A stretch of DNA of 64,000 nt from Octopus sinensis (lineage: Eukaryota): NCBI RefSeq assembly GCF_006345805.1, contig NC_043017.1:3844001-3908000 (forward strand), in the 5' to 3' direction. Below the pieces are notes generated by a model. That model searched no databases. It was not told the DNA's origin and saw only the letters and a list, made by a program, of their open reading frames with translations. Below, in pieces: positions 1,905-29,362 of this stretch. The translations under genes were made by a program, and so were the position numbers. How positions within the stretch are numbered: the stretch's first letter is position 1; each line of letters opens with the position of its first letter.

Positions 1905-2008
1905 CCTTGAGGACTTAGTAAGGTCCTGAATTTCAATGTATCTTCCATCGGATTCTAATTCCACGACGCCCACATTGCCGGTTGTAGAGCGACTCATAGT
2001 CACTTTAC
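1905..2008 (-). CDS. IF gene A exon 8 (lamin-tail-like domain start)
   Basis: CCAAG|GT AAA GTG...TCA AGG|GTAAGT; 104 nt; KVTMSRSTTGNVGVVELESDGRYIEIQD; same size in B and C. Confidence 0.88.
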
Positions 2009-2724
2009 CTTGGAAAGAAAATGTCCATAAGTATGAATTTTATAAACTGTATACATGCGTGCACGCGTGTGTATTTATGCGTTATACATATAGCTATTGA
2101 TGCAAGTAGCGAATATATAAGAATGTATATACAAATAAGAAACATTATAACCAATAATGGTCGCCAGTGTCATTCCAAAAGCTAACTTCCAGCAATCAAT
2201 AGAAACGAGATTCCATCCTTGTTGGGGCGCCACATTCTCTTGTAACGTCTCGGATTGTTGCTTATACAATCTGTTACATTGTTAGGTTACAAAAACGAAT
2301 AAACACAAGAATTGAAAAACTTATATTGACTATGTTTCAAGAAGTAAGTATACCTATATACGTATGGTTATCTATCTATCTACCTACCTATCTATCTATC
2401 TAATCTCTATATACATTACATACATACATATGTACTATATATAAATGTATACATATATGTATACATTCATATATATACATTCATATATATACATATTTAT
2501 TGTGTGTATATATATGAATGGCGGTGCCCCATCATGGCCACAGCCCGTGAGCTGAAACTAGATAAAATATAAAATATATACACGCACATATGTATATGTG
2601 TGTATATATATGTATATATATATATATTTGTGTATATATATGCATATATATGTATATATATGCATATATATGCATATATATGCATAGATATTTGTGTATA
2701 TATCTATATATATTATATATATAT

Positions 2725-2775
<51 letters not shown>

Positions 2776-3455
2776 GACGGGCTTCTTTCAGTTTCTGTCG
2801 ACCAAATCCAATCAGAAGTATTTCGTCGGCCCGAGAGTATAGTAGAAGGCACTCGCCCGATGTTTCACGCAGTCAGACTGAACCAGGAACCATGTGGTTG
2901 GAAAGCAAGCTACTTTACCACACAGCCTCTCCTGCGCTTATATGCATGCATACATACATACATACATACATACATACATACACCCACGTGTTGCATTGCA
3001 GGTTTGATACTTCGGTACTTTTTAAGGAGAGGTTGTTATAACTCATAGTTTATTGTAAATTAAGTATTTCATTACAATACAACTATGAAGCTGACCTGAT
3101 TGAAGGAGTGATTGTAACCCCACCACCACCACCACCACCACCACCACTAAACTCTGCTTGACATGGCTGACTAGTTCGTAGAATGCAGTTCCGAAATGAA
3201 GACAATTTGGAAACGTGAAACGCTAGACAGACTTATGAAGTACTCCATATTGTTTATGGAGTCAATTGTGTGAGTCGAGAATCTGTTTGTCGCGGATATA
3301 AGACACCAAACCCTCATGATGGTCACCTTTTTTGACAAGAAGGACATCATTTGAATTCACTGGGCTTCCTTAGGCCAGAGAGTTATCAAAGGATAATTGA
3401 TGTTCTGTAGGGGTTCAAGATGAGATTTTGTTGCACAAGTCAGAGTACCTGTATG

Positions 3456-3458
<3 letters not shown>

Positions 3459-3518
<60 letters not shown>

Positions 3519-3800
3519 TGTGTACAGTGCTCAGGTGCACTACAACTCATCTAAAGTGTATATATAATCAGGTGTAGTTTCGGCGGATTTCGGAAAGCAT
3601 GAGGGCCTTAAAGGATGCAGTGTCATGGCAGTCAACAACTGACGCAGGCAGTTTATTCCATGCTTCAGCAACTCTGAGCGTGAAAAAATGTTTCCGAAAG
3701 TCATGGGAGCTGTGTTGTTTTCTGACTTTGTATGCATGTCCACGTGTGTTAGACACATGGAGATCAAAAAGGTGTTCAGTGTTGTTGTTGGTGAGGTGGT
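3459..3800 (-). mobile_element. CR1-like LINE 3' end with (ATT)n tail
   Basis: TRGHAYKVRKQHSSHDFRKHFFTLRVAEAWNKLP...SFK, the typical CR1 ORF2 C-terminus; (AAT)n at 3459-3518. Confidence 0.8.
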
Positions 3801-3852
3801 TGATAACTTTGTATGTATGTATGTATAATGATGTATAAAAGAAAAGGTATTT

Positions 3853-3914
<62 letters not shown>

Positions 3915-3963
3915 AACCTTACAGTTTATGAGACGAGTGATGAAGGAAGGTATTTCAACTTAC

Positions 3964-4043
3964 TTTGTAGTGCACTTCTGAGTGCACTCTCAGCGTCCGT
4001 TGTGAATCCACCCATGCCACTCATCACTGTAGACATACTCATC
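3964..4043 (-). CDS. IF gene A exon 7 (rod-tail linker)
   Basis: TATAG|G ATG AGT...CAA A|GTAAGT; 80 nt, phase 2 to phase 1 as required; MSMSTVMSGMGGFTTDAESALRSALQ; GGF-T-ESAL shared with gene B exon 7. Confidence 0.85.
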
Positions 4044-5089
4044 CTATAAAGTTAAATATATTCAAAGTAATTTCAAGAATTATTTTAGATTAGTATGTAA
4101 ATATAATAGAAAATGATCTCCATGATGTTGTCATGCAAATAAACAGGAAGTAGATTGTTTAATATTCGTTGTTGTTGGAGACGGATGTGGTTTTGTTGCT
4201 GTTGAATCTCAGTTTGACGTAGATACAAGAAGTTTGTGATGAAGAAGGTGATCTCGTTAACTGCTTTCTCGGATTAGGTCATTGAATTTGATTTTCCTGT
4301 ATTAAAGTGTACCGTCTGAACGGACAGGAATCTGGCTGTATTTTCTTCCAATTCTAGCGGAGATTGAGTTCACTCCTCCTACCGGTCGATTGTGGTATGC
4401 GTAATTGAAAATATTTGTAGATAAGAATATAGAGGCATAGATAATTAGATGTCAATATGCGCTCACACGTGTATATCAATGTGTGAATGTCCAATATCCA
4501 TATCGGTTCTTGGGAGTAATGTAGAATAATTGGTGGTTTGTAGAATAATATACGAGTGACAGTATCTTTTGTCATTTGAAGTGTATGAGAGTGATTTTGA
4601 TTTGTTCTTTATGAGGCGTAAATGTATTACGGTGGTAATGGAGAGATGATCAGGAAACCTCTTGGGGTTGTTTGCTATGCAGTTTAAACAGCCAGGGTGT
4701 GGACCAGAAGACGAAATTTGGAGCGGTTTTACAGTAGACATTGTTTTGTCATATATTTTTTGGTCCCATGCTAATCCCAACCAAAGATATTTTAATCACC
4801 CAGTTATGTTTTTTAGAAATACGTAATGTAAGAGTCCAAAGAATATGGTATGTATTTATTCTTAATATGTTCTGGCAGAACCAGCCGGGAATATTTGATC
4901 ACTGCAGTTTTTGTCATCGATGTATATGTCCTCTCTTTAGACAAATCTAAGTTCATAACTCACGCAAATCACAATTTGTAAGATGACTTTGAGACACCGA
5001 TTCGGTCTCACTGTATTGTACATATTTTCAGTCGAAGATACTCCGGACCGGTCAGTCTAACAAGAGTACTGGTTATTACTTATAGATCA

Positions 5090-5400
5090 GGAAATAAAAT
5101 TCTTTTCTGATGAGTGATGATGTCTTCCAAACAGATGATAATTCGTAGGGTGCAAGCAGACCAGTGAGATTCCAAATAATAACGTATGCAATTCGATGTT
5201 CAATGGGAATCGTCTGATCCCCGTTGCTTTTCCTCATCTCAGAATATCTCATCCCTATCCAATCTCGCTCTCCGGAGTGCAACTCACGAATTATTGTCAA
5301 CTAATGCTCAACTAAGTACCAGAGTTGCAATATTTTTCGAACATCTTTTTACCTGGGTTCGAATCCCACCAAAATTAGGTTTTTCGATCAATAAAAAAAC
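5090..5400 (-). mobile_element. Probable mariner 3' remnant
   Basis: Decayed SPDLAPSDYHLF-like region (LLAPYELSSVWK...RKEF). Confidence 0.35.
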
Positions 5401-5496
5401 ATGTCTACAATTACGCCTCATACTTCCCTATTATCACTCCCCACTCTCTTTCTCTCTTTTCCTTCTCTCTTTCTCTCTTTTCCTTCTCTTTCTCTC

Positions 5497-5532
<36 letters not shown>

Positions 5533-5685
5533 AACTGTGTTCAAACCTATTGGATGAATTCCACCACGTTTCTTATTCCCGTGGTCCAAACAGTGTCTCT
5601 GCGACTCCATCAGCAGACGAGAACCACGGAAGAACGGAAAGGCTACCAGAATGTTCTTGTTTAAAGTTAAATATTTATCATTTAC

Positions 5686-5906
5686 CTGCCCTCTTCTCCT
5701 TCAAGGAGTTTGCGGTACGCTGCAATCTCCAATTCCAGGGACAGTTTAGTATCCATCAAGTCTTGTAATTCCGTCAACATTGACTCCAGCTCTGAACGCA
5801 AGCTAAGAATCTCTTGGTTGTAGTTCGCAGCATCAGTTGTCCGTCCGTTCAGGGCTTCCTCCAATTCCATTTCTAGACCTCTTATTCTACTTTTCAAACC
5901 TGATAT
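5686..5906 (-). CDS. IF gene A exon 6 (coil 2B end, helix termination motif)
   Basis: TATAG|ATA TCA...GGC AG|GTAAAT; 221 nt; ends LMDTKLSLELEIAAYRKLLEGEEG-R, the IF consensus. Confidence 0.95.
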
Positions 5907-6599
5907 CTATAAAGACAAGATAAATAATGCAATTATTAACGAAAAACTATCAAAACACATTATTATTATTGTTGTTGTTGTTGTTGTTGTTATTATTATT
6001 ATCAGTTGATGAAAACATCTTTCTTTCTATCCCACACCATATAAAATCACGACTTGATAACTTGTATCAAGACTTTACAGTTTTGAGTGCTTATGAAGCC
6101 AGAAACAGGTGTAGGGACTCATTCTGTTAAAACGGTGAGTTTGGATCCCGGCGTTTTGTGTCATTTCGTTTCATGTTGAACCAGTGCACAAAGCTAGGAA
6201 AAGGCAGTTGTAACTGTGATTCAAAAAGCCTGCCTTGTCACCTGTGTCACGCTGAGTCTCCCCGAGAACTACATTGAGTACGCGTGACTCAGGAGCGCTC
6301 AGTCATTTATAAGTTAATATCACGAGCAGGCTGTTCCGTTGATCGGATCAACTGAAATACTCGCCGTCGTAACCGATGGGGTACCAGTGTCATATCAAGG
6401 TGTGTGTATTAGTATATACATACGTAAATGCGTACTTATATATACATATTTATATATATAAATATAGATATATTCATATACATGTATATATGCTTATGTA
6501 TGCATGTGCCTATATGTATGTACATGTATTTTTATGTATATACCTATATATATTACATATGCATATATAATAAATACGTATATATATAAACACATAGAA

Positions 6600-6651
<52 letters not shown>

Positions 6652-7266
6652 GAGTGAGAGAGTAGTGCATGCCATCAAGGCGACACTGGGGTAAAATAGT
6701 ATGTATGTATGCATGTATGTTTATTAAGTATGCAAAACACAAATATATATATGTGTGTGGGTGTGTGTGTGTGCTTATACATATATATGTGTGTGCTTGT
6801 GTGTATGTGTGTATATATATAGATATATCCCATCTCACTCCCATCCCATCCCTTACACCCCACCTTTGCTTCCCCCACTCTTTCCCATCCCTCAGACCCC
6901 AACACCACGACACACCACCACAACACATCTTGCCACACCACACACCACCACACCACCATACCACACCACACCACATTACACCACCCCGCATACACTAGCA
7001 CTGACTACTTCCCAACACCCACACCATCATCCACACACCTACACATGCACACACGCACACATCAAGGTCACCAGCCCCCTTCCACACGCACATAAACGTT
7101 CTCACATACACACTCACATGCACCTTCGTTTTGGGATTACCACTACTTTATTATCTCCCTTCTTCCTATCTCTCCTGTGTGACCCTTCTGTCCGGCATTC
7201 ACCATGATATATCGCTAGCCACTAAACCTTTTTTACTATTTTCTCTCACTGTTTATTTCTATGTTC

Positions 7267-7302
7267 CTTTCTGTCGAAGAGCGTAAGCTCGAAACGTAAA
7301 AG
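7267..7302 (+). ncRNA. Hammerhead-like motif (CUGUCGA core) in a PLE-derived repeat (~6940-7400)
   Basis: CUUU-CUGUCGA-A-GAGC-guaa-GCUC-GAAAC-GUA^-AAAG; second copy at 37279-37314 on minus. Confidence 0.4.
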
Positions 7303-7405
7303 ACCTTCTCACTTACCGAGCATTAAACTAATACATCTGTTTGTTGCTTATACACCCGTCTTCGTCTTTTGTTTGTTTTGTTTTTTTGTAAATTCTCACT
7401 GTATG

Positions 7406-7439
<34 letters not shown>

Positions 7440-7440
7440 T

Positions 7441-7442
7441 GA

Positions 7443-7527
<85 letters not shown>
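7441..7527. repeat. (GATA)n microsatellite just 3' of gene A exon 5 donor
   Basis: Direct observation; positional match at 37517-37626 in gene B. Confidence 0.95.
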
Positions 7528-7528
<1 letters not shown>

Positions 7529-7546
7529 TTATGTAATGTTCCTTAC

Positions 7547-7666
7547 CTGACCTTCATATGCGCCTACTTGACCCGACATATCGCTTGCTTCCATACGTGA
7601 ACGCCTGTTTTCAGTGGACATTTGAGAAGCCATTTCGGGCTTGGCGCCTGCTTTCAGTCTCTGCAT
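7547..7666 (-). CDS. IF gene A exon 5 (coil 2)
   Basis: CATCAG|ATG CAG...GGT CAG|GTAAGG; 120 nt; MQRLKAGAKPEMASQMSTENRRSRMEASDMSGQVGAYEGQ; paralog at 37670-37801. Confidence 0.85.
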
Positions 7667-9744
7667 CTGATGAGGATAATAAAAAATTATAAGTATTCAT
7701 TTTTCACAATCACCAATGCTGAGTGGTCATTATAAGGAAAAGTTACGAATGGTTGAGTTGTTGTACAAAACCAGTTGTGAAAACTAGGCATAAGAAGTCA
7801 AAATTACACAAACAGTTCCTCGTCTTCCTTCCGTTCTCAGTGATTTTGAAAGAAGATGGGTCGTGTCTGAAAACTACGTTGTCTGTCAAATGAAATTTGC
7901 CTCCTACAGTTGCAATATATTTTTTCCATTGCCATCACAGTAAAACAGCATCTCAATCCCAACAGAAAGGAATGCTAAAGTGTGATCTCCATGACGGATT
8001 CTACTGATCGCTAACTCAGTTTCACATATAATTGCAGCTAGTCAGCATAATTCTATCTACAACAACTTAACATCGCCTGGACACTCAGCATGTGTCTTTC
8101 AGGACTGTTCTGCATATGTGTTGGATGTATCCGGATGATGCCTTACCACACAAAGATTATTCAGAGCGTGGAAATTCAATGGTCGGTTATTTCTGTAATT
8201 TCTTCATAATCTAAGAGACCGAAATTCTTGCAGAGAAAGCTCTTCTGTTCATCTTTAGTTGCTGTAAATGTCAACCGATTTACCATTCTAATATTGGAAT
8301 TGAGTCTTACATTGTTAACTAATAGAAAAGTCCTACCCTGTACTCTTTTAGGGTGTTTCAGAGTTGACCGAACTTGCAATAGTTGTAATAATACTCCTGT
8401 ATACTATAGGCATAAGTTTTGACATTTTAGGAGGTGGAGGTAAATCTTCGTTTTCAACTATGTGTTATTTCTACAAGTGTCTTTTGCAGCTGTATTTTCT
8501 AACCCCTCTCCAAATAAAGGCCCAATTGTGTATCCGCTTACACATGGGCATTCCCATACTAACTCATAGAAACACTATTTACAAGTAGAACAGTTTCATC
8601 CTAAAGTTTACCCCATCATACCTATTCCACAACTTTTCTAAGTCAGCTTTATTCTTTATAAATGCAATATCGGAGGCTATGGTTGAGGATGCTGAGGATT
8701 GTTTCTGAGTTGCGAGACCAAATTTGAAGAGAAGGTGTCAGTCGAATAAATTCGATCCCCTGTTTGACTGCTACTTTATTATTTTTTTAATTTTATGCAC
8801 CTCGGAGTGATTTTGAAATCTGAATTTAAAGAGTCGGAACAGATATTAGAAAGACATTTACAATAAGTACACATATACATATGCACGTGGTTCATACCTA
8901 CATACATACATAGCAACATATGCGTTTCTGAATGTACCCGCAAGAACCAGACTTTCGAAAAAATTTCCATTTAGGATATTCTACTCACACATCTTTGGTT
9001 TAATGGAGTCCATGGTAAAGAAAAATTGCCCAGTGTATCTTGGGACTTGCTTTCATGATATGGCTGCGATATATTTATGACTGGATTGAAAATGATAGAT
9101 GATTTTAGGATCCCGTTAAATCTTGTTTCGGCAAACAAAATAGATGATCTTGCATAATGAAACACTATGTATATTGATCGATATAAAGTTGATATCCAGG
9201 GCTTTCTTTCTATGATCGTAGATTTCAAGATATTTGTTTTGATGGTTCAGTGTATCATAAGTAAATCTGAAATACGCTTCTGGTTTTCTGGATGAGAAAT
9301 TGCTACAATAATCCTTTCTAACTAAAAAGCACTGCATTCTCCTTAGTTTTATTATTAAAGCAAAACAATTAGGGAAGAAAGAGTAAAGTCGTGGATACAT
9401 AGATGGAAAAAAGGAAAACCACATGCTTCCCTGCATTATACACCGTTCAAAACAAAGAAAATCAAAACAGCAATGCATAAATAACTTCTCAACAACATGA
9501 TTGATGTTATTTGAAAATAGGTTTAAATATAAGAACAGTCTGATAGCAGCTGTTCCACGTGACTATAAAATGTGAAAAAGATTATTTAAATTTTTCGATA
9601 GAAACACACTTTCTACGGGTTTATGTAAGAATATTGAATTTCCAAACGATTGCGTAGTAGCAAAAGAAACGCAATTTATATAGTTAAGTTTCCAACAGTT
9701 TTAAAGTTTACAAATATCTTTATTCTTTCTATATATTTCTTTAC

Positions 9745-9909
9745 CTGTTCTTTATGTCGAAATTCCATCGCCATAGTAGCTGCCTGCAGCTGAGCATCAT
9801 ATTCGGCACTTAAATCAGCAACCATACTTCCAACTTCGGCCTTCCATGATTCTTGGAAGTCGGGTATCTTCTGTGTTTTGGATAACATTGCTTGATATTC
9901 TTTGCATTC
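9745..9909 (-). CDS. IF gene A exon 4 (linker L12, coil 2 start)
   Basis: GCAG|GAA TGC...GAA CAG|GTAAAG; 165 nt; ECKEYQAMLSK...AEYDAQL...RHKEQ. Confidence 0.9.
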
Positions 9910-10581
9910 CTGCAAAAAGAGTAATGAAAACAAAACGTTAAGTAAAATGGAGATAAACAATATTCGTTTATTTTATTGAGAAATTGTCATAAATTTAAAA
10001 CCTAATGCTACATAGAAATGAAAATATGAGAATATATTGTTGTTCACAGCAAATTGCTGGTATATATTTTTTGTGGGGCCAGGATAAGAATGCAGTCAAT
10101 ACTGAAGACTTTTATCATAGTATCAAAGAGAATTTTCCCTCCAAATTCCGAACACAGCTGGAAGAGATTTAAACTCAGCGCCGTAAATTAATGAAAGCAA
10201 TACTGCTTATTTCCTTCTTAGGGAAGTTGGCGTTGTCTGCACATTGTTATATCATTATATAACAATGGGCAGACACCGATATGCGTAATGGGTCGTTTGA
10301 GAGATAAGTATTTTAGTTATAGATAAGTGATCAAGCCGTAAATAACTGCAGATTCATTATTGGTATGCGTGCCAATGACACTGTGGTTGGTAGTCTACGA
10401 AATTAGATGACTGTAACTAACCACTTGATTCTTTAATTATGATTGCGGAATTGATGATATCTGTTTCAAGAAATCTTTAAAACCCCGCGAAGAAATTGTG
10501 AAAGGAAATAACTAAAATTTCATAGCAATTCTTCCGCAAGAAAAAATATCAGGGAAGAGAAAAAAATAAAAGCAACATTAC

Positions 10582-10677
10582 GGCACTATGGACGTCGTTG
10601 AGGAAAGCAAGTTCTTCTTCCAGCATCGCCAGACGGTTTTCTAATTCCAGTCTTTGAGTAGTTTCGCTTTGTAAGTT
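10582..10677 (-). CDS. IF gene A exon 3 (end of coil 1B)
   Basis: TTTAG|AAC...GCC|GTAATG; 96 nt; NLQSETTQRLELENRLAMLEEELAFLNDVHSA; not in ORF track. Confidence 0.9.
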
Positions 10678-12141
10678 CTAAAGAAAAAAAAAGTACGTAA
10701 GCATCAATTCATTCTTGTTTGGAGATAAAGTACGAAACTAATAAAAATGAAATTGGTGCGCAAAAGAAATATATTCTGTCGCCTCATGCAAAGCATTATT
10801 AGACGTTTATGCTATACTTTAATAACCGAAGTTTTAGAAATCATGCGAGTTTACTTACAGAATGTCTATGGTAGTTGGCAATGCATTATAACTTACAATT
10901 TTCTTAACCTTTTCTAAGTTATCAAGGTAGACATTGACTGAGTATGTTTAAAGAATTCTCCATGCATTTTAATTTTATTAGAATTTGAAATTTGAAATTT
11001 AAATGATCTTTTAAAAACACAGACATTTTGTATGTATGTAGACATCAGTTATCTCCATGTAAGTGCAAGTATCTCTCACTTCAGGATTGCTTCATGTCTA
11101 GAAATGTAATCTTTGTGTTGTTAGAGTTTATTTTGGGGCTGTATTGTAGTTCTGTGTGAAAATCTTTCAAAGTGTTCTGCTGCGTTCATTACGACGAATA
11201 TGTCGTCCACGTATATGGTGTTTATCGTGTTTATTTGCTGCTAACACTTTATTCAACACTGACCGTGTAAAAGACCGTACGAGTGTATCAAAGGTTGATC
11301 CTTTTTACTCATATAGTTTGCCTTCTGCTCTGATGAAGGAGATTCTTCTTGAACTGAAATTAATTGATTACTTTTGCTGCTATATTTAAGTGATTTCATT
11401 ATTGGATATTTGTAAGGCAGCGAGCTGGCAGAATCGTTAGCATGCTGGACGAAATGTTTAGCGATATTTCGTCCGTCGCTACGTTCTGAGTTCAAATTCC
11501 GCTGAGGTCGACTCTACCTTTCGTCATTTCGTGGTCGATAAATTAAGTACCAGTTGAGTACTGGGGTCGATGAAATCGACTATCCTCCTCCCCCAAATTC
11601 CAGGCCTTGTGCCTATAATAGAAAGGATTATTGGATATTCGTATAGATTTTTAAGGCGATTTCCATTGTTTCTGCCCCTCGAATCGCTCGTAAACAAACT
11701 TTATTCATTTCAGAAAAAACATTATTTATATTAATGTTTAACGTTTCCGTTTGATGGTGTATTTACCTGAGATACAAAAGCCCGTAGGGGAGCTATCATG
11801 ACACATCAAAAGAGGAAGGTAGAACAAGAGAAACGCAAGCACGACGCCACGAATACATCGGGTATGACACCTGTTAAGATTTTACAAACTACACGTATGT
11901 GTAGGAAGCAAATTCGTACTAACCATAGAATACTTGATTTACAAGTTACTAACGACCATTGTTGTATGTAACTTCTACAACAAACATAAAAGTTGTAAAC
12001 CCGACATGTGCAATTGAAATAGAGGCCGTACAAATGCAACACACCCTACTCGGTACATCCTGCGCCTCTTACAATAAGCGGTGGTAGCGTACTACTACAA
12101 TCAATCGTAAACATCAGTATGTATGTGTGATGTGTGTATGC

Positions 12142-12181
<40 letters not shown>

Positions 12182-12717
12182 CTGTGTGCGCAAAAGGTCC
12201 TTGCAATGTACTACAGAATTCAATATAAACAATTCTACACAGGGAATCATTAGTTAATAATATATTGTTACACCGTAAAACTTCAGACAGACATAAAAGA
12301 TTAAAATGGAATCAGTACTCATAATAAAGTACAATACAGATTCCAAAAGTGGCAGAAACGCCGTTTGGTGACTATTTCGAGGGAGATGATGTTAAAAATT
12401 AGGTAAATAAATTATTTGTTATTCAAATAACTAATCCGTGAAGTTTTAGATACCACCTCGTATATGATCTTTCGGATGTTGTCTAGTGAGGAATTTTCTG
12501 TTATATTTTTGTAATATTTCTATTTGTTGTGTTTTTAATTTTTAAAATTATATATATATACATTAGAAGGTTTGGAGATGATGTACAAGTATTATATATT
12601 AGAAGAAATAAGATACTCAGAAATCTGGATGGTTTTATATTTACAGATTTTTAGTAATATGTCACATGCTTTTATAAATCATATATTAGCGCTTGCATCC
12701 ACTCTAGTGGATTCTTC

Positions 12718-12757
<40 letters not shown>

Positions 12758-12809
12758 TATATAATATATATATATATATATTGTGAAAATTATAAGGGTA
12801 GAAAATTGA

Positions 12810-13145
12810 GAAAATTTCATATCTGTGGTTAGCATGCGTAATAAAGGTCAATAGACTACATATTTTCATATAGATAGTGTATAGTATTTATACACAAAGA
12901 GGCGACCCTTTACAGGACATAATTATGCATTGTCTTAGACGATCCCTTTGTCCATTAATATAGAAACTCGAGTTTGGGATTAACACTAAATAATTTCGTG
13001 GTTCGGATTTGGCTGCCCTCTCTAGCATGTAAGGTGTCCTGCAAAGGGTCGCCTCTTTGAGTATAAATACTATACACTTTTATATATGAAAATATGTAGT
13101 CTATTGACCTTTATTACGCCTGCTATCCACAAGTATGAAAATTTC
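12810..13145. mobile_element. Foldback/MITE with ~110-bp inverted arms
   Basis: 12810-12918 is the imperfect reverse complement of 13036-13145. Confidence 0.7.
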
Positions 13146-13584
13146 TAAACAAAACCCCCAAATAAATTATTTTGTAATTCAAGAACGGAAAATATACTTC
13201 ATTTCCTTGAAGATACCCAGCAATATATGGTTTATTACATCTATAAAAGTTCGAATGTTGATGATTCAAACATACATGTGAACGATTTTTTCGGATATTT
13301 TTTATTGTTTTGTAGAGCCGGTTCCATTAACCCTTATTCTTATCGGTATCTCTTTTTCTTTGCATCATTTTTCCGTTGTGATACAAATAAAATGAACCAA
13401 GCATCTATTATATTTTTTTCTTTTCGATTTTCTTTTATTAACTTTAAAATTTATCAGACTATTTATACATATATATTAAGGAACTCTCTTTCAATATATT
13501 TGATAAAGCCAGTTGGCATCGGGATTGCTATTAAGTATTCCCTTACGGGGAAATTGCATCCTCACATTGTGTATAAATGTGTAT

Positions 13585-13610
13585 ACATATGTATGTATAT
13601 ACATACATAT

Positions 13611-13642
<32 letters not shown>

Positions 13643-13663
13643 CATATATACATATATATATAT

Positions 13664-13694
<31 letters not shown>

Positions 13695-13718
13695 TCTATA
13701 TATATATATATATATATA

Positions 13719-13809
<91 letters not shown>

Positions 13810-13837
13810 TATATATATATATATCTATATATATATA

Positions 13838-13891
<54 letters not shown>

Positions 13892-13897
13892 ATATAT
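13585..13897. repeat. Imperfect (TA)n microsatellite
   Basis: Direct observation; similar long tracts at 2590-2772, 20778-21025, 32955-33155 (GT)n, 47630-48147. Confidence 0.95.
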
Positions 13898-14281
13898 GGA
13901 GGCGCAATGGCCCAGTGGTTAGGGCAGCGGACTCGCGGTCATAGGATCGCGGTTTCGATTCCCAGACCGGGTGTTGTGAGTGTTTATTGAGCGAAAACAC
14001 TTAAAGCTCCACGAGGCTCCGGCAGGGGATGGTGGTGATCCCTGCTGTACTCTTTCACCACAACTTTCTCTCACTCTTACTTCCTGTTTCTGTTGTACCT
14101 GTATTTCAAAGGGCCGGCCTTGTCACTCTCTGTGTCACGCTGAATATCCCCGAGAACTACGTTAAGGGTACACGTGTCTGTGGAGTGCTCAGCCACTTAC
14201 ACGTTAATTTCACGAGCAGGCTGTTCCGTTGATTCGGATCAACCAGAACCCTCGTCGTCGTAACCGACGGAGTGCTTCCAC
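13898..14281 (+). mobile_element. tRNA-head SINE family 2, full-length
   Basis: ggaggcgcaatggcccagtggttagggcagcgg...gtttcgattccc head; near-identical copy at 55942-56326; variants or partial copies at approx. 6130-6390, 23797-23916, 27035-27315, 33362-33436(-), 43393-43700, 47145-47440, 52025-52330. Confidence 0.85.
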
Positions 14282-14295
14282 CATATATATATAAT

Positions 14296-14342
<47 letters not shown>

Positions 14343-15046
14343 AACTCAAACATAATCTTTAGGTGCAGACCACATATCATAAGGAATTAAAGAAATTGAA
14401 TAATAGAAGAAACGCGAAAAAATTCAGAAGGCAGCATATAGAAAACGTACACAGTAAACAACGGAAAACGAAAATTTGAAAATGAAAAACAGAAACCAAC
14501 ATGTAAAAAATAAAAAGTAAAATGGTAAAAGAGCTATTCTCATTAGACCTTAAATGATAAGGCCGGAAAAATATCAGGTCAGTCAGGAATAGGCGAATTT
14601 CTGACCTGGAATTCAATAGAGAGTTGGGGATCTTAGTATTGAACAGAATATACGTTTTTCAGCTAAACAAAGTCTACATTTTTCGATTCGCAAACGCCCG
14701 CTAGGGGGCAGTGCACCATTAAGACGAAACAATTGTTTTTTGCTATACCCCGTCTTCTCTATTAATGTTTAATATATACCCTACTTTCACCCTGAAATTC
14801 CTGGAAGTTGATCCAACGCTGAATGCAAAGTATCGTTAATGACACTTGATAGCCATAAGAGGTGAATGTGCTCCGCAGACACACAACTTGCCCTGAAATA
14901 TGTTTCGGATACTGCGTTTAACGCATACTTTCTAAACCTTAATCCTCTCCTTTAACTTTGAAATCGAATCGTGTGTGTGTGTGTGTGCATGAATTTGTAT
15001 ATGTACGTATTTGTGTGCCATATTTGAATGTGAGCGTTTATAGAGA

Positions 15047-15087
<41 letters not shown>

Positions 15088-15140
15088 GAGAGAGAGAGAG
15101 GGCAGGATAGAGATTACGGATTCAAAGTATTGCAACGTAC

Positions 15141-15327
15141 CGTTCTAAGTTCGGCCATTTGACCATCAAGAATGCCATATCTCTTCTTCCAGTCAGCAAG
15201 TTGCTTCTCCAGTTCGCTTGTCCTCCTTCTGCTGGTTTCGCTGTCTGCAATGCGGCGGGCAACTTCATCGTGTAATCCATCGATTTCCGCTTGCAGTCTA
15301 TCTCTTTCGTCCTGCACTTGGCGCAAT
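15141..15327 (-). CDS. IF gene A exon 2 (coil 1B including protostome/lamin 42-residue extension)
   Basis: TTAG|A TTG CGC...AGA ACG|GTACGT; 187 nt = 61+126, the type III exon-2 size plus 42 codons; LRQVQDERDRLQAEIDGLHDEV...GQMAELRT. Confidence 0.92.
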
Positions 15328-16825
15328 CTAACAGAAAAATAGTAAAAATGTTTTGCTAAAGAATATCTATTTATCCTAGGTATGGACTGGCAGACACGGC
15401 AATGATGAAACTTTGGTTTATATTTTAGTAAAATAGTAATAACAATATACCAATATTATATATATTATGAAGAAAAATACCGAACAGCCAACCGAAACGC
15501 CATGCTTTCTTATTCTCTTTATCCTTTTCTATACACTTCCTGTTCCCAAGAAACTTAACTTTACATAAATATGTTATTATAAGAAGGAGGAATTAATGTT
15601 TTACGAGCTTTTGATTTTAGTTGTTCCAGCCATCGTATTTTTTTAGAAGTTTATATATGAAAAGAAATATATATATTGGTGTGCTACGTAATATACACAC
15701 ATATCACTGCAAAGCCGGCGAGAAAGTAGGCACAACATAGTCGGATGTAGCTACAAGAAGTAGCTACAAAATATCTCTATATTCACACCCTACCATGTTA
15801 TATAAATGGACGTATGCAATGATAAAAAAAAAGATGACTGGTCGTCTTTTTGATCATCAAATACTGCTGGGTGGATACTAACAGAGATTTGGACTCCAAT
15901 CAGAAAACTACATTAGGTTCATGAACAAAATACGAATATCCAAATTTACTTAGTCTTATGCTTGTATAGAGTGAATATTAATTCATAGCTGAATGTACGT
16001 AAATAAAACTATATGGAATTGTTGGATGTGTTCTTCCCATTTCAAAATTTGAAGGATGTTTCTCGGTTGACAGATTAGCGTATATGGATGATATTAATTT
16101 TCTATTTAATTAATATCGGAGCTGACAAATTGTCCTATCGATATAATTAATTCGAATGGAATAATATTTTCAATGAATGGAATTAAAAGTGTTAGCTTGA
16201 ACAACTGTCAGTTTCTCTCTTTTTTTTTTTTGCGGGAGAAGTCCATCGTTTTATTTCTGTTCACGATAACATCATGAATGCATTATTAGAAAGTAAATAG
16301 CTGCTAATTACAATTTATAGTATATTCTTCTACCTCTGATGCGTTTTGCAATACTTAGTGTGTATATCCAAATCTTTTCAAAATTGGAACGCTTGCAAGA
16401 CCGAAATTTTTATTTTTTTTATAATATAAGAATGGACCAAAAGGTTTTGTGCTGTAACGCAGAACGAACAAAATTTCTGTGCTTAGTAATGATATATTTA
16501 ATATTCCAAATCTTAAAATTTTAAGATCTGAATACCTAAATAGAATGTGCAAATTCACTTTAGGTAGAATGTGGAAAAAGAGAGTTACAATGTAATTAGA
16601 ATAGTCTAATCAAGAGAACTTGACCAAACCTTTCTTTTTGATGTGTAGAAGTTTTGAACAACATAATAAAGGAGCGGAAAAATTAACAGAAAGAGACTTA
16701 AAAGGAAATGAGAATAGCCTAATTAAAAGAACATGGCCGCATCTTTAAGATAAACGTTTATAATGCGTAGAAGTTTCAAACGACTTAATAAAGGAGCGGG
16801 AAAATTAACGGAAAATTTTACTTAC

Positions 16826-17253
16826 TGTTCAGTCAAATCTTCGACTTCTTCTTCAAGCGATTCATTCTTGGACTTTACAGCTGCAAGTTCCTTATCCTTG
16901 TCTTCGATGATTCCTTTTAAGTCCTCCAGCTGCTCTTGGTATGATATTTTGATCACATCAATGTTAAATTCAACTTGAGATCTATTTAAGAGTTCCTTAA
17001 GATGTTTATTCTCAGCCTCCAGCATACGTGTTTTTTCAAGGAATTCGGCAAGTTTGCAATTCAAACCTTGCAGATCTTTCTTTTCCTTTTGGCTGCTATT
17101 TTTCATTTCAGCAACACTTCTTTGGGAAGATTGTGCTGCCACTCCAGAGGCCAGAGAAATTGGTGCTCCCATGGATATACTCATCCGGGATTGGCCGGGT
17201 ATTTCCCTACGGACAGACGTTCTTCTATTCCTTCGTCTTATAACCTGCGACAT
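16826..17253 (-). CDS. IF gene A exon 1 (head, coil 1A, start of coil 1B)
   Basis: ORF MSQVIRRRNRR...EKKDLQGLNCKLAEFLEKTRMLEAENKHL...EDLTE; ends CA|GTAAG (phase 2, 428 nt); paralogous to 50435-50886. Confidence 0.92.
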
Positions 17254-24656: not shown

Positions 24657-24986
24657 TATTGACAAATGAATTTACTCATTTTCTACAATTATCTTAAATT
24701 CAAGAGGATCGTGTAAAAAATTTAAAACAGAAAATACTGCAAGTGCTTATCATTTTATTGAAATTAGTATTATAATGGAAAACCAGAGTCTTTCTGAAAC
24801 TTCGTGCTGACTGCAACAAAAAACGATTCTTTTCTCAGTTGAGATAAATTACGTTCTTCATGCGTTTATTTTGATAACAAGGACAGCACTTTCCTGAAAA
24901 ATAAAAGAGATTGAGAAACCAATGAATACAGAGGGAGATTAAGGTGTTAATGCATCAACAGAGTAAGCATTTTCATGTAGTGTACA

Positions 24987-25390
24987 TAGGCGCAGGAGTG
25001 GCTGTGTGGTAAGTAGCTTGCTAACCAGCCACATGGTTCCGGGTTCAGTCCCACTGCGTGGCATCTTGGGCAAGTGTCTTCTGCTATAGCCCCGGGTTGA
25101 CCAATGCCTTCTGAGTGGATTTGGTAGGCGGAAACTGAAAGAAGCCTGTCGTATATATGTATATATATATATTTGCATGTGTGTCTGTGTTTGTCCCCCT
25201 AGCATTGCTTGATAACCGATGCTGGTGTGTTTACGTCCCCGTCACTTAGCGGTTCGGCAAAAGAGACCGATAGAATAAGTACTGGGCTTACAAAGAATAA
25301 GTCTCGACTAAAAGCGGTGCTCCAGCATGGCCGCAGTCAAATGACTGAAACAAGTAAGTAAAGATAAAGTAAAGTAAAGTAAAGTAAAGA
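24987..25390 (+). mobile_element. SINE family 1 copy in gene B 3' region
   Basis: Near-identical to 34480-34905. Confidence 0.85.
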
Positions 25391-25760
25391 AGGATAGTCA
25401 TTGTGGCCTGTGTCATGAATCAATACATTGGGACGTCGGTGTTGACCAATGGTCAGAATATTTAGTATTCGATTTTTACACTAGCAAATTTAAACGAAAC
25501 ATTTCATTAAACTGCACAAGATTTCTCCCCGACACCAAATATCCCAAATCCTTTAAATATTATGTGATTTGGACAAAGCATGGTTCGATTACAGATGTGG
25601 TTATAAATTGTTTTCCATAAATAAATGTTGTTTATTTTATACAGGATGATAGATCATGAAGATCTGGTTACTGTTGGGAGCTGGTCTCATCGAATGACTA
25701 CGTCGCTGTCCTCTCATCGACTCACAAAATGCACGGAGTTGGAAGTAGAATTGTATTTAA

Positions 25761-25980
25761 CCCTTTAGCATTCAGATTATTCTGTCAAATGTAAAGCTTA
25801 TGTATTCACACCATGTAAAATTAATCTTGTATCATTTCATGGCTTTGAGATTTCAATGATGTGATTGTTTATTTTTAAAATGACACAATAAGGTAGCTAT
25901 GAATGACCATATCTGGCTAGTTTGAACATAAAATAGGTAGAATATTTTGGCCGGATATGGCCAGTTTAAACACTAAAGGG
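25761..25980. mobile_element. piggyBac-type MITE
   Basis: TTAA|CCCTTTAG ... CTAAAGGG|TTAA termini with TTAA target duplication. Confidence 0.75.
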
Positions 25981-26015
25981 TTAAGAACGAGGTGAGAGAA
26001 GTGGGAGACAAAATG

Positions 26016-26153
26016 TTACAGAAATAAACGAGATCTTACCTTATTTTTGTCGTCTTTCAAAGTAATTGTCGACGGCGCCGACAATGAACCCCAGTGTTCG
26101 ACAGAAGAAGATGTGATGCCTGGTTGGCCAGCACCGAATTTCGATCCCCAAAT
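26016..26153 (-). CDS. IF gene B exon 10 (read-through model ends ...LKDDKNKVRSRLFL*)
   Basis: TTTAG|ATT TGG GGA; IWGSKFGAGQPGITSSSVEHWGSLSAPSTITLKDDKNK then GTAAGA at 26039 (donor or V-R codons), TAA 26018-26016. Confidence 0.75.
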   Translation of the reverse strand: MWGSKFGAGQPGITSSSVEHWGSLSAPSTITLKDDKNKVRSRLFL

Positions 26154-26739
26154 CTAAAATTGGAAAAAAGAATTAAGAATAGTAACATCATCAACAAAAG
26201 TGATATTTGTGTGTGACTTAGACACAAGGGGAGCATTATAAGAGAGAGGTTTAGTCGATTACACAAACTGCACTTTTTCACTGGTATTCTTATTTTATAG
26301 ACCCAAAATAGTGGATGGGAGAAATTGAATGTGGCAGGATTTGAACGAAGAACGTAAAGGGCCGAAAACAAATATCGAAGCGTATGTTTTTCGGATGTCC
26401 TAACGATTTCTGCAAAGCACAGTTTTATATTTTAGTGAAGATATCTGTTAGTCGATGATATCAACCTGTGTACGTGATTATCACTTTATTTAATTTATTG
26501 ATCTCAGAGTTTGAAAGACAAAACTAACATCAATGGGATTTGAATTAAGAAGATGGAAAGTTAGAACAAATAACACAAGGCATTTTTCCGCTGTTCTAAG
26601 AATTTTGGCTATTCATAGAATGCTTACCAACCCTCTGGCTGTCCGTGGTTACTACAATAGTCAGAGAGGAGGCATTAAATTTCAGTTAACGACTGAATTT
26701 AATATTATTATGTCGTTTTTGTATTTGGTTTGTAAGATT

Positions 26740-26794
<55 letters not shown>

Positions 26795-26803
<9 letters not shown>

Positions 26804-26937
26804 ATTTAGGAATGGTCATTTTGCCAGTTTAGCCAATAAAAACACACGCACTATATATTTGGTGTTATTTTGCTTCAGTGTTATTTATTTTTTACATTAA
26901 ACTGGCAAAATGACCATTCCTAAATACAACAATATCT
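26795..26937. mobile_element. Small MITE with ~35-bp inverted arms
   Basis: ttgttgtatttaggaatggtcattttgccagttta and its reverse complement. Confidence 0.65.
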
Positions 26938-26989
26938 GTTTCAACACACGACTTCACATAAAAAATCTTGCACAACAAATATTTAAACG

Positions 26990-27036
<47 letters not shown>

Positions 27037-27310
27037 GGGCAGCGGGCTCGTGTTCGGAGAATCGTGGTTTCAATTCTCAAACCGGACGTTGTGTGTGTTT
27101 ATTGAGCGAAAATTCCTAAAGCTCCACGAGGCTCCGGCAAGGGGTGGCGGCGACCCCTGTTGTACTCTTTCGTCCCAACTTTCTCTCACTCTTTCCTCCT
27201 GTTTCTTGAGTAACGCTGCGATGGACTGCTGTCCCATCCAGCTGGAGGGAAACACATACGCCATAGAAACCGGGAAACCAGGCCCATGAGCCTGGCTAGG
27301 CTCGAAAAGG

Positions 27311-27347
<37 letters not shown>

Positions 27348-27352
<5 letters not shown>

Positions 27353-27549
27353 CAATTGAGGGTAAAATTAATTAGTTATTAATCAATTTCACCAAGTATT
27401 CAGTATGTAAAGGGACCATTTAAGGCGAATTCAAAATATTACATTATATTACATTATATATTTTGAATTCGCCTTAAATGGTCCCTTTACATACTGAATA
27501 CTTGGTGAAATTCATTAATAACTAATTAATTTTACCCTCAATTGTTGAA
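27348..27549. repeat. 202-bp near-perfect palindrome (92-bp arms, 18-nt spacer)
   Basis: One arm mismatch seen by eye. Confidence 0.9.
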
Positions 27550-28476
27550 ATTATAATTCATTTCTCTCTGTTTATTGCCTCGGTTTTCACTGCTAAAATA
27601 TGGTGTTTGCTAGTTTAGCCCACGTGGGTGGAAGGGGAGAGCAGGAATTCTTCGCTTGCATATTTTGAATTTGTTGGCACTGTCAGTTTGAACGGGTCGT
27701 CTGAGGTGATAAGTCGCCAAAAGGGTATGTTCCTACTTTTCAGTGTTTCCAAATCCAAATTAAGAAGTTTTGGGCTGACGAAAGAAATGTCGAATTTTAT
27801 TTGGCTGATCTAGAAACGTAACGTTCTCAAATAATCTTTGCACTTGTGATTTTTTAATGTTTTTACCCCCATACCTCCGTGGGTTATTTTGAGTAAACAC
27901 TATCTGAGAGAAATTTTCTTTAAGTATTAGAAATAGCTAAAAAACTTTTTTGGCTGCTATTTCTAATGAGTTCAGTATGTGGCAAAGTAATTTATTTTAC
28001 TAAGCCCTTATATATGTAATATATATATATATATATATATATACTTACTTTATTTAAAAGCAGCAGAAATATAACAAAGCATATTACTATACCTCAAGAT
28101 GCAACGAAAATTTTAGAAAAAAAAAAGTAAACGAGTGGAAAATGAACCGGTGAGTGTGTTAATTGATAAGGCATTAATATTATTAATATAAATACAGATT
28201 AGAGACAAGTAACTTCTCTTTCTCTTATCCCCCTCTACTCTTCCTCATCCTCGTGGGCAGACGTAATAGACAAAAATATTACGGTTAACATATGAGAAAC
28301 AATATAACTAACATTGTTGTAATGTTTCGTGGCGAATTGTGACTTCCAGCAATCGATACGAGATTCCATTCTGGGCACTGGGTCACTTTTTGTCGACTTC
28401 AAGTGGTTCTTATAAAATCTGATATTTAGTCACATTATAAGACTAGTAGACATTTTTTAAAACGACACAAACTTAC

Positions 28477-28587
28477 CTTGATCATTTTACCAGAACTAAA
28501 CACGTTACCATCGGTAAATGTATGGGTGTAGCTCTTTCCATTTTCTGTGGTTTGGGTCAATGTCCAGTTCTTTAAGGTTGTTGCCCC
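28477..28587 (-). CDS. IF gene B exon 9
   Basis: CTTAG|GGG GCA...ATC AAG|GTAAGT; 111 nt; GATTLKNWTLTQTTENGKSYTHTFTDGNVFSSGKMIK. Confidence 0.88.

Positions 28588-29328: not shown

Positions 29329-29362
<34 letters not shown>

What the first reader, a model, noticed from the sequence alone, without database searches (positions are those of the whole stretch)
14986..15340. Local gene-conversion-like tract: exon 2 is ~98% identical between paralogs A and B while other exons are far more diverged
Seen: exon 2 (15141-15327 vs 44230-44416) differs at only 3 of 187 nt (one amino acid, R/H). The downstream intron through the (GA)n up to the (GT)n is also nearly identical (14986-15140 vs 44069-44229). 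Exon 3 differs at about 13 of 96 nt, and exon 6 proteins share only about 47 of 74 residues. Identity at synonymous and intronic sites argues against purifying selection alone. Inference: a recent ~350-bp ectopic conversion across 29 kb, bounded by microsatellites, homogenised the exon encoding the 42-residue coil 1B extension, which may keep the paralogs able to co-assemble.
Basis: partly seen in the sequence, partly recalled or inferred. Interest (0 to 1): 0.7.

Follow-up and report, generated by a model that had tools for sequence, protein, structure and literature searches.

The report
Gene conversion patch between octopus filament genes
About 355 bases (one exon plus the start of the next intron) were copied from one octopus neurofilament-type gene into its neighbour 29 kb away; this is a clear but ordinary case of gene conversion between tandem gene copies, and this exon has been homogenised repeatedly in octopus evolution.

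Summary
The window is Octopus sinensis chromosome CM016879.1. It holds tandem lamin-like cytoplasmic intermediate-filament ('60/70 kDa neurofilament-like') genes A, B and C, all on the minus strand. Exon 2 of A (15141-15327) and of B (44230-44416) differ at 3 of 187 nt. The adjoining intron 2 is 96-97% identical up to a (GT)n repeat. Elsewhere alignable A/B DNA is about 76-78% identical.

Comparison with O. bimaculoides and O. vulgaris supports conversion over selection or an assembly error.
- Exon 2 groups by species: 8 of 8 informative sites.
- The other exons group by orthology: 151 of 156 sites (Fisher P = 1.7e-11).
- B is B-type down to 15 nt before exon 2. It is then A-type for 355 nt (A 14987-15341; B 44071-44430), and unalignable beyond the (GT)n.
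- A is collinear with its O. bimaculoides ortholog throughout, so A, or an A-like copy, was the donor.
- The independent O. vulgaris assembly has the same patch in B. The event is therefore real and falls between about 34 and 2.5 Mya.

O. bimaculoides shows its own exon 2 homogenisation. O. vulgaris B has an extra ~66-nt A-type patch in exon 3, so conversion recurs. This is a known kind of event in a new place; the co-assembly idea is untested.

The parts
14987..15341 (-). Conversion tract in gene A (donor copy): last 14 nt of intron 1, exon 2, and the first 154 nt of intron 2 up to the (GT)n
   Evidence: Breakpoint map; alignments. A is collinear with its O. bimaculoides ortholog (L004) across the tract and both flanks at 86-94%.
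44071..44430 (-). Conversion tract in gene B (recipient copy)
   Evidence: B matches O. bimaculoides B at 94% in the 140 nt upstream. It then matches O. sinensis A at 98.4% (exon 2) and 96.8% (intron 2), and O. bimaculoides B at only 58% in intron 2. 43 of 44 diagnostic sites are A-type or shared O. sinensis-derived.
15141..15327 (-). Gene A exon 2: 187 nt, 1 nt plus 62 codons, coil 1B including the lamin-type 42-residue segment
   Evidence: AG/GT splice sites and reading frame. The alignment gap against vimentin falls inside this exon.
44230..44416 (-). Gene B exon 2
   Evidence: The assembled 566-aa product is identical to NCBI isoform X1, P0280.
14971..14987 (.). (GT)8.5 microsatellite at the 3' edge of the tract in A
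43998..44068 (.). Imperfect (TG)35 microsatellite at the 3' edge of the tract in B
15050..15100 (.). (GA)25 microsatellite inside the tract in A
44136..44191 (.). (GA)28 microsatellite inside the tract in B
15342..15475 (-). Conserved block at the 3' end of intron 1 in A. It is not part of the tract: 78% identical to B and 94% to the A ortholog.
44431..44570 (-). The same conserved intron 1 block in B. It is B-type: 94% identical to O. bimaculoides B and 100% to O. vulgaris B.
365..17253 (-). Gene A, coding exons 1-9: 16826-17253, 15141-15327, 10582-10677, 9745-9909, 7547-7666, 5686-5906, 3964-4043, 1905-2008, 1414-1527, 365-475. The last exon lies outside the window.
   Evidence: the ortholog is P0015.
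24858..50886 (-). Gene B, complete coding sequence of 566 aa: 50435-50886, 44230-44416, 40801-40896, 39990-40154, 37670-37801, 34220-34440, 33217-33299, 29168-29271, 28477-28587, 26040-26153, 24858-24893
   Evidence: identical to NCBI isoform X1, P0280, and the same length as the 566-residue gene called in L005.
55447..64000 (-). 3' part of gene C: exons at 62101-62204, 61068-61178, 59308-59415 and 55447-55467. Its exon 2 lies outside the window, at L005:14837-15023.

Best explanation
A non-reciprocal interlocus (ectopic) gene conversion copied about 355 bp from gene A, or from an A-like copy of the same cluster, into gene B 29 kb upstream. The copied piece is the last few bases of intron 1, all of exon 2, and the first ~155 bp of intron 2.

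Shown: B carries A-type sequence in this interval, including silent and intronic states that arose in the O. sinensis lineage. B keeps its own orthologous sequence on the 5' side and in all other exons. A is unchanged relative to its ortholog. The event happened in the common ancestor of O. sinensis and O. vulgaris, after the split from O. bimaculoides. Since then 10 differences have accumulated across the best 340-column window, which takes in most of the tract.

Inferred: a break in B, plausibly at or near the (GT)n/(GA)n microsatellites in intron 2, was repaired by synthesis-dependent strand annealing using A as the template. Exon 2 supplied the long near-identical stretch needed for strand invasion. 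The tract ended where homology collapses: at the (GT)n on one side and at the diverged intron 1 on the other.

Exon 2 is a recurring target. O. bimaculoides A, B and Z share their own derived states in this exon. O. vulgaris B has acquired a further ~66-nt A-type patch in exon 3. Strong protein-level constraint on exon 2 keeps the copies similar enough for conversion to recur. No adaptive benefit need be assumed.
For: 1. Discrete jump in identity. Exon 2 is 98.4% identical and the tract intron 96-97%, against 78% in other exons and 76% in other alignable intron. No permutation out of 2000 comes near.
2. Silent sites. Exon 2 dS is 0.055, against pooled pS 0.385 in the other exons.
3. Phylogenetic incongruence in the quartet OsA, OsB, ObA, ObB. 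Exon 2 gives 8 sites for species grouping and 0 for orthology. All other exons give 3 for species grouping, 151 for orthology and 2 for the third grouping. Fisher P = 1.7e-11. Exon 2 differences are OsA-OsB 3, OsB-ObB 19 and OsA-ObA 11.
4. Direction. OsA-ObA identity is even across intron 1, exon 2 and intron 2 (93.8, 94.1 and 85.7%). OsB-ObB identity falls from 94.3 to 89.8 to 58.1%. All diagnostic sites switch from B-type to A-type between 15342 and 15330, and back to noise at the (GT)n.
5. Derived states shared by the paralogs. Exon positions 22, 163, 174 and 175 and intron position -3 are O. sinensis-specific against all outgroups and are shared by A and B. Position 136 is O. bimaculoides-specific and shared by ObA, ObB, ObZ1 and ObZ2.
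6. Independent assembly. O. vulgaris B (L008; ONT-based assembly, PMC10700109) has the same tract with the same B-private changes.
7. Recurrence. O. vulgaris B exon 3 is B-type for its first 30 nt and identical to O. sinensis A for the remaining 66 nt. O. sinensis B lacks this patch.
Against: - No reads were examined, so copy A in O. sinensis rests on one assembly plus its collinearity with the O. bimaculoides ortholog.
- DNA of the O. sinensis Z-type paralogs downstream of the window could not be fetched. Their exon 2 peptides differ from A at 1-3 residues. The donor could therefore be an A-like Z copy rather than A itself. At exon position 28, B carries the state seen in Z and the outgroups, not the A state.
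- The evidence for separate homogenisation in O. bimaculoides rests on one or two polarised sites and a modest drop in pS (0.17 against 0.20-0.35).
- The break-repair mechanism and any role of the microsatellites are inference only.
Confidence: 0.9

Rival explanations
1. Purifying selection alone, on the protein or on an RNA-level element such as an editing-site duplex or a splicing enhancer, keeps exon 2 and the adjacent intron identical in A and B.
For: Exon 2 is the most constrained part of the protein within the A/B/Z group: pN is 0.00-0.03 in every comparison. A central stretch of about 20 nt is identical in all ten paralog and ortholog sequences. Cephalopod neural transcripts are heavily A-to-I edited (general knowledge).
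Against: - Orthologs are not conserved at silent sites in exon 2: pS is 0.21 for A and 0.36 for B.
- The intron segment is 58% identical between A and B in O. bimaculoides, against 97% in O. sinensis.
- Lineage-specific derived silent states are shared by the paralogs.
- Predicted folding of exon 2 with its flanks is no better than shuffled sequence: z = -0.4 and 0.0.
- There is no Rfam match.
Confidence: 0.03
2. Assembly or polishing artefact: reads from one copy overwrote the other in the O. sinensis assembly.
For: The paralogs are tandem. The assemblies of this family are imperfect: there are N gaps in O. bimaculoides and a possible collapse downstream of B in O. vulgaris.
Against: - The two copies are not identical: 10 substitutions, plus different (GA)n and (GT)n lengths.
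- The O. vulgaris assembly comes from another species, another animal and another technology. Its B gene carries the same tract and the same B-private substitutions (PMC10700109).
- Polishing cannot turn sequence that is 58-78% identical into sequence that is 97% identical while leaving sharp edges.
Confidence: 0.02
3. The patch is a genuine conversion, but the donor was a Z-type paralog (the '70 kDa neurofilament protein' genes downstream of A, outside the window) rather than A. Alternatively, A and B were both recipients.
For: The O. sinensis Z proteins P0166 and P0167 have exon 1-3 peptides almost identical to those of A. At exon position 28, B shares C with Z and the outgroups, whereas A and its ortholog have T.
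Against: In O. bimaculoides the Z-type intron 2 start differs clearly from the A type. The O. sinensis B intron segment is closest to O. sinensis A (96.8%) and next closest to O. bimaculoides A (85.7%).
Confidence: 0.15
4. Unequal crossing-over or a segmental re-duplication created a chimeric gene, rather than a short conversion.
For: Copy number in the cluster appears to vary. O. bimaculoides has A, Z1 and Z2. O. vulgaris jumps from the B-A spacer to Z-type exon 6.
Against: B is B-type on both sides of the patch: intron 1 and exon 1 upstream, and exons 3-10 downstream. A single crossover cannot produce this. It needs two exchanges 355 bp apart, which is operationally a conversion.
Confidence: 0.02

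Closest known systems
Conversion between the human fetal globin genes HBG1 and HBG2, with the tract bounded by a (TG)n simple repeat in IVS2 (Slightom et al. 1980; from my own knowledge, not checked here)
   Same: Tandem paralogs a few kb or more apart. A tract that covers exon and intron and is nearly identical at silent and intronic sites. One edge lies at a (TG)n microsatellite. Sequence beyond the edge is diverged.
   Different: In this window the copies are 29 kb apart and much older (background identity about 77%). The tract is only ~355 bp. The other edge lies at an intron/exon junction.
Concerted evolution of tandem KRTAP1 genes, with contrasting coding and flanking patterns (bioRxiv 10.1101/282418; found, abstract only read)
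   Same: Within-genome copies are more alike than orthologs between species. The homogenisation is local rather than gene-wide.
   Different: KRTAPs are intronless matrix proteins, not intermediate-filament proteins. In the octopus genes a single internal exon of a 10-11-exon gene is affected.
Exon-limited micro-conversions between diverged tandem paralogs, such as RHD/RHCE, CYP21A2/CYP21A1P and the red/green opsin genes (general knowledge)
   Same: Short tracts of tens to hundreds of bp are moved between paralogs whose remaining sequence evolves independently. The events recur at preferred sites.
   Different: Those cases are known mainly as polymorphisms or disease alleles within a species. 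The octopus tract is fixed and shared by two species.
Protostome lamin-like cytoplasmic IF genes: the squid NF60/70/220 gene and the Helix aspersa IF gene (Way et al. 1992; Dodemont et al. 1990; general knowledge)
   Same: A long coil 1B with the 42 extra residues, a lamin-type tail domain, no CaaX box, and many introns in lamin-like positions.
   Different: Those genes were described as single genes with alternative 3' exons. Octopus has a tandem array of at least five or six paralogs that exchange sequence.

Membership tests
Interlocus (ectopic) gene conversion tract | A discrete segment whose identity between the paralogs is significantly above that of both flanks | tested here: met
   10 mismatches in 340 columns against a background rate of 0.222. 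The minimum over 2000 permutations was 39. Edges were mapped to within 12 nt at the 5' end and to the (GT)n at the 3' end.
Interlocus (ectopic) gene conversion tract | Excess identity extends to synonymous and intronic sites | tested here: met
   Exon 2 dS is 0.055 against pooled pS 0.385. Tract intron is 95.8-96.8% identical, against 76% for other alignable intron.
Interlocus (ectopic) gene conversion tract | Phylogenetic incongruence: the tract groups by species and the flanks group by orthology | tested here: met
   Quartet sites are 8:0 for species grouping in exon 2, against 3:151 elsewhere; Fisher P = 1.7e-11.
Interlocus (ectopic) gene conversion tract | Non-reciprocal: the donor is unchanged and the recipient is replaced | tested here: met
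   OsA-ObA identity is uniform across the region. OsB-ObB identity collapses inside the tract. A carries no B-type states.
Interlocus (ectopic) gene conversion tract | Both copies are real, not an assembly artefact | tested here: met
   The recipient tract is present in the independent O. vulgaris assembly. The donor copy is collinear with its O. bimaculoides ortholog. Read-level confirmation was not possible.
Interlocus (ectopic) gene conversion tract | Mechanism: repair of a double-strand break using the paralog as template | not testable with these tools
   Inferred only from the shape of the tract and the adjacent microsatellites.
Concerted evolution (recurrent conversion) of exon 2 | Independent lineage-specific derived states shared among paralogs in two or more lineages | tested here: met
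   O. sinensis-derived states at exon positions 22, 163, 174 and 175. O. bimaculoides-derived state at position 136, and probably 46. Species-specific residues D/A versus E/G are shared by A, B and Z within each species. Support for the O. bimaculoides lineage is thin, at 1-2 sites.
Lamin-like (protostome-type) cytoplasmic intermediate-filament gene | IF rod domain with a conserved coil 2B end motif, plus a lamin tail domain | tested here: met
   Precomputed Pfam hits PF00038 and PF00932 on the close O. sinensis cluster paralogs P0166 and P0167 and on P0016; the precomputed list for the B product cluster itself (P0163) gives PF00038 and PF24161 only, so the lamin tail domain of B is inferred from its tail exons 7-9. 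The sequence LELEIAAYRKLLEGEE lies in exon 6, and the tail exons are 7-9.
Lamin-like (protostome-type) cytoplasmic intermediate-filament gene | Coil 1B longer by 42 residues than in vertebrate cytoplasmic IFs | tested here: met
   Alignment to lamin A is continuous. Alignment to vimentin skips query residues 103-144, which is 42 residues, all inside exon 2.
Lamin-like (protostome-type) cytoplasmic intermediate-filament gene | No CaaX box | tested here: met
   The B product ends ...ESAVLVIKINA, with no C-terminal CaaX. An NLS was not specifically searched for.

The most novel reading that the evidence does not exclude
Exon 2 may be more than a passive hot spot. It encodes the lamin-type 42-residue part of coil 1B, a region that IF structural work places in the tetramer overlap (general knowledge, not tested here). 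On this reading it is kept identical across the co-expressed paralogs A, B and Z by selectively favoured recurrent conversion, so that the paralogs can still co-polymerise while their heads, coil 2 and tails diverge. A related possibility is that the B-A chimeric isoforms in the NCBI annotation are real, so that the array works partly as one transcription unit with interchangeable exon modules.
Probability: 0.15. Interest if true: 0.6.

Novelty: new member of a known kind. Interest (0 to 1): 0.38.

Why it matters
The case has clean breakpoints and a clear donor, recipient and time window. It shows that a single exon of an old tandem paralog pair (about 77% identical overall) can keep exchanging sequence.

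There are practical consequences:
- Trees or dS-based dating of this octopus neurofilament-like family will be wrong if exon 2 is included. The same applies to exon 3 in O. vulgaris, and probably to exons 1-3 of the A/Z copies.
- RNA-seq reads cannot be assigned between A and B across exon 2. This may underlie some of the chimeric B-A isoform models in the NCBI annotation.
- Assemblers and purge tools may collapse this array.

Biologically, the case offers a natural test of whether coil 1B identity matters for co-assembly of invertebrate IF paralogs.

Tried and rejected
- tblastx of A against B timed out on low-complexity sequence. I replaced it with blastp of stop-to-stop segments.
- The first word-indexed protein search, with A exons 1+2, returned only three proteins and missed close relatives. 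A profile of exons 3-6 found only distant paralogs. The exhaustive representative search and a full-length B query then gave the orthologs.
- Exact look-ups of the window's exon 1 and exon 2 ORFs, of P0001 and of P0281 found nothing on record.
- The idea that a conserved upstream intron block pairs with exon 2 as an RNA-editing duplex was tested by folding. The results were z = -0.4 and 0.0, so I rejected it.
- There was no Rfam hit anywhere in the window.
- The apparent loss of exon 6 in O. bimaculoides A turned out to be an assembly gap.
- Exon 3 has a low dS between A and B in O. sinensis (2 synonymous differences). This is not a conversion: all 7 quartet sites support orthology.
- Collinear blocks at 81-86% identity (11406-11579 and 13810-14088) are copies of interspersed repeats, not conversion.
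- Four literature searches found no report of gene conversion in cephalopod IF genes.
Full report
**What the window is.** A self-comparison shows three collinear, diverged copies of one gene on the minus strand. Their ORFs and splice sites define a lamin-like cytoplasmic intermediate-filament gene.
- Gene A has coding exons 1-9 within 365-17253.
- Gene B is complete within 24858-50886.
- Only the 3' exons of gene C lie in the window.

The B product I assembled is 566 aa and identical to NCBI's O. sinensis '70 kDa neurofilament protein-like isoform X1' (P0280). Locus L005 (Octopus sinensis GCA_006345805.1, CM016879.1) matches window 45444-64000 at 100%. That identifies the source.

Alignment to lamin A is continuous. 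Alignment to vimentin skips exactly 42 residues that lie inside exon 2.

**The observation.**
- Exon 2 differs at 3 of 187 nt (two synonymous changes and one R/H change).
- Exon 3 differs at 13 of 96 nt.
- The exon 6 peptides share 47 of 74 residues.
- The start of intron 2 is nearly identical through the (GA)n up to the (GT)n.

| A versus B | Tract | Background |
|---|---|---|
| Exon identity | 98.4% (exon 2) | 69-87% per exon, 78% pooled |
| Intron identity | 95.8% | 76% (alignable intron only) |
| Synonymous difference | dS 0.055, dN 0.007 | pooled pS 0.385, pN 0.219 |

A scan statistic gives 10 mismatches in the best 340 columns. The minimum over 2000 permutations was 39.

**Related sequences.** The word-indexed protein search was patchy. 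An exhaustive search and cluster look-ups gave the relevant proteins and, through them, DNA:
- O. bimaculoides A (L004);
- O. bimaculoides C+B, a fused gene model (L007);
- O. bimaculoides Z1/Z2, A-like paralogs downstream of A (L006);
- O. bimaculoides D, a more distant upstream paralog (L001);
- the whole of O. sinensis gene C (L005);
- O. vulgaris B (L008).

Orthology is clear outside exon 2. O. sinensis B matches O. bimaculoides B at 83-96% per exon and matches A copies at only 65-87%. O. sinensis A is closest to the O. bimaculoides A/Z copies, at 75-94%.

**Conversion versus constraint.** In exon 2 the pattern reverses.

| Pair (exon 2, 187 nt) | Differences |
|---|---|
| OsA-OsB | 3 |
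| OsA-ObA | 11 |
| OsB-ObB | 19 |
| ObA-ObB | 10 |

Among quartet-informative sites, exon 2 gives 8 for species grouping and 0 for orthology. All other exons together give 3 for species grouping, 151 for orthology and 2 for the third grouping. Fisher P is 1.7e-11.

Polarising with outgroups gives the following:
- Four exon sites (positions 22, 163, 174, 175) and intron position -3 are derived in the O. sinensis lineage and shared by A and B.
- Position 136 is derived in O. bimaculoides and shared by its A, B, Z1 and Z2.

At the protein level the same picture holds. 'GILDGQMAELR' occurs in O. sinensis A, B and Z, and 'GILEGQMGELR' or 'GILEAQMGELR' occurs in O. bimaculoides A, B and Z. Homogenisation has therefore happened separately in both lineages.

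**Breakpoints, direction and age.** I made a five-sequence alignment of 700 nt on each side of exon 2 and a site-by-site map from it.
- O. sinensis B carries B-type states (equal to O. bimaculoides B) at every diagnostic site down to 15342 in A coordinates (44431 in B).
- From 15330 to 14992 (44419-44076), 43 of 44 sites are A-type or shared-derived.
- Beyond the (GT)n the sequences are unrelated.

| Region | OsA-OsB | OsA-ObA | OsB-ObB |
|---|---|---|---|
| Intron 1, proximal 135 nt | 78% | 94% | 94% |
| Exon 2 | 98.4% | 94.1% | 89.8% |
| Intron 2, unique 63 nt | 96.8% | 85.7% | 58.1% |

A is native throughout and B is the recipient.

O. vulgaris B has the same tract with the same B-private substitutions (exon positions 28 and 116, plus several intron sites). 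It lacks the R-to-H change, which is therefore a later mutation, at a CpG, in O. sinensis B. The published dates are about 34 Mya for O. bimaculoides against the vulgaris/sinensis clade, and 2.5 Mya for O. sinensis against O. vulgaris (PMC10700109). The event falls between them. Tract divergence of about 2.9%, against about 7.9% for the A orthologs over the same columns, suggests roughly 6-13 Mya. This is a rough estimate.

**Recurrence.** O. vulgaris B exon 3 is B-type for its first 30 nt. It is then identical to O. sinensis A for the remaining 66 nt, and it returns to B-type in the intron. O. sinensis B lacks this patch. O. sinensis A and Z proteins are almost identical through exons 1-3, and O. 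bimaculoides A and Z share different, species-specific residues. Their pS is 0.05-0.07 in exon 1. Sequence exchange in this array is therefore widespread. The A-to-B patch is its furthest reach into an old paralog.

**Mechanism.** What is shown is a non-reciprocal replacement of 355 bp. What is inferred is that a break in B near the intron 2 microsatellites was repaired from A. Exon 2 would have provided the homology, because protein-level constraint keeps it similar (pN of 0.03 or less within A/B/Z). The (GT)n and the diverged intron 1 would have limited the tract.

O. bimaculoides A and B exon 2 peptides differ at only 2 of 62 residues. The conversion probably changed few amino acids, so no selective advantage is required. 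The co-assembly hypothesis remains open and untested.

**Rivals.**
- Selection alone is contradicted by the ortholog and intron data, and by the absence of predicted RNA structure.
- An assembly artefact is contradicted by the independent O. vulgaris assembly and by the private differences between the copies.
- A single unequal crossover cannot give B-type sequence on both sides of the patch.
- A Z-type donor cannot be excluded, because O. sinensis Z DNA was not obtainable. However, the intron part of the tract is of the A type as defined in O. bimaculoides.

**Verdict.** It is a new, well-resolved instance of a well-known process. No published description for cephalopod IF genes was found.

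Noticed in passing
window 365-50886 (genes B and A); proteins P0163, P0279, P0165: NCBI's O. sinensis isoforms X2, X3 and X4 join gene B 5' exons to gene A 3' exons: B e1-7 + A e8-10, B e1-8 + A e9-10, and B e1-2 + A e3-10. The last could be a mapping artefact of the near-identical exon 2. The other two cannot be, and they suggest read-through or conjoined transcripts.
   Followed up: partly
L008:11081-11146 (O. vulgaris B exon 3), equivalent to window 40801-40866: O. vulgaris B exon 3 carries a ~66-nt A-type patch that O. sinensis B lacks. This is a second and younger conversion tract.
   Followed up: yes
L008:28149-35490 against window about 22744 and below: O. vulgaris is collinear with the window only to about 2 kb past the end of gene B. 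It then continues into exons 6-10 of a Z-type gene, with no counterpart of gene A. This is either a real deletion by recombination between paralogs or a collapse in an assembly that used purge_dups.
   Followed up: partly
window 15342-15475 and 44431-44570; also L001, L004, L006, L007: A block of about 135 nt at the 3' end of intron 1 is conserved among paralogs A, B, Z and D (75-79% between A and B), while the rest of intron 1 cannot be aligned. Its function is unknown. Folding gave no sign of pairing with exon 2.
   Followed up: partly
window 14971-15100 and 43998-44191; L001:12500-12800: A (CT/GA)n run followed by a (CA/GT)n run sits just downstream of exon 2 in paralogs A, B and D, and in reduced form in Z. 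The microsatellite pair is therefore older than the paralogs, or it is repeatedly regenerated.
   Followed up: no
L005:14837-15023 and L007:5786-5972 (exon 2 of gene C in the two species): Gene C exon 2 is outside the recent tract, with 37-40 differences from A or B. However, at exon positions 40 and 112 it shares the species-specific state with A and B in each species. Its ortholog divergence (30 of 187) is higher than in most of its other exons. This hints at older exchanges.
   Followed up: partly
proteins P0015, P0016, P0166, P0167; L006:10118-10458 and 35120-35460: The A and Z paralogs share species-specific residues through exons 1-3 in both species, and O. bimaculoides A against Z1/Z2 has pS of only 0.05-0.07 in exon 1. 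The cause is either broad concerted evolution of the 5' half or independent recent duplications.
   Followed up: partly
L004:21151-21607: The O. bimaculoides A protein model (XP_052831260.1) lacks the coil 2B end because exon 6 is cut by an assembly gap. The model bridges the gap with a 60-nt segment, whose counterpart is window 4997-5056.
   Followed up: yes
window 56599-57137 / 58322-58860; 24213-24658; many sites such as 2705-2990, 11406-11581 and 13810-14091: There is a 540-bp inverted repeat (96% identical) in the B-C spacer, a tandem ~149-bp repeat downstream of gene B, and three interspersed repeat families with seven or more copies each in the gene introns.
   Followed up: no
window 48845-49799 (-) and 30659-32306 (-): Long ORFs lie inside introns of gene B and look like remnants of mobile elements. 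They were not searched against any library.
   Followed up: no
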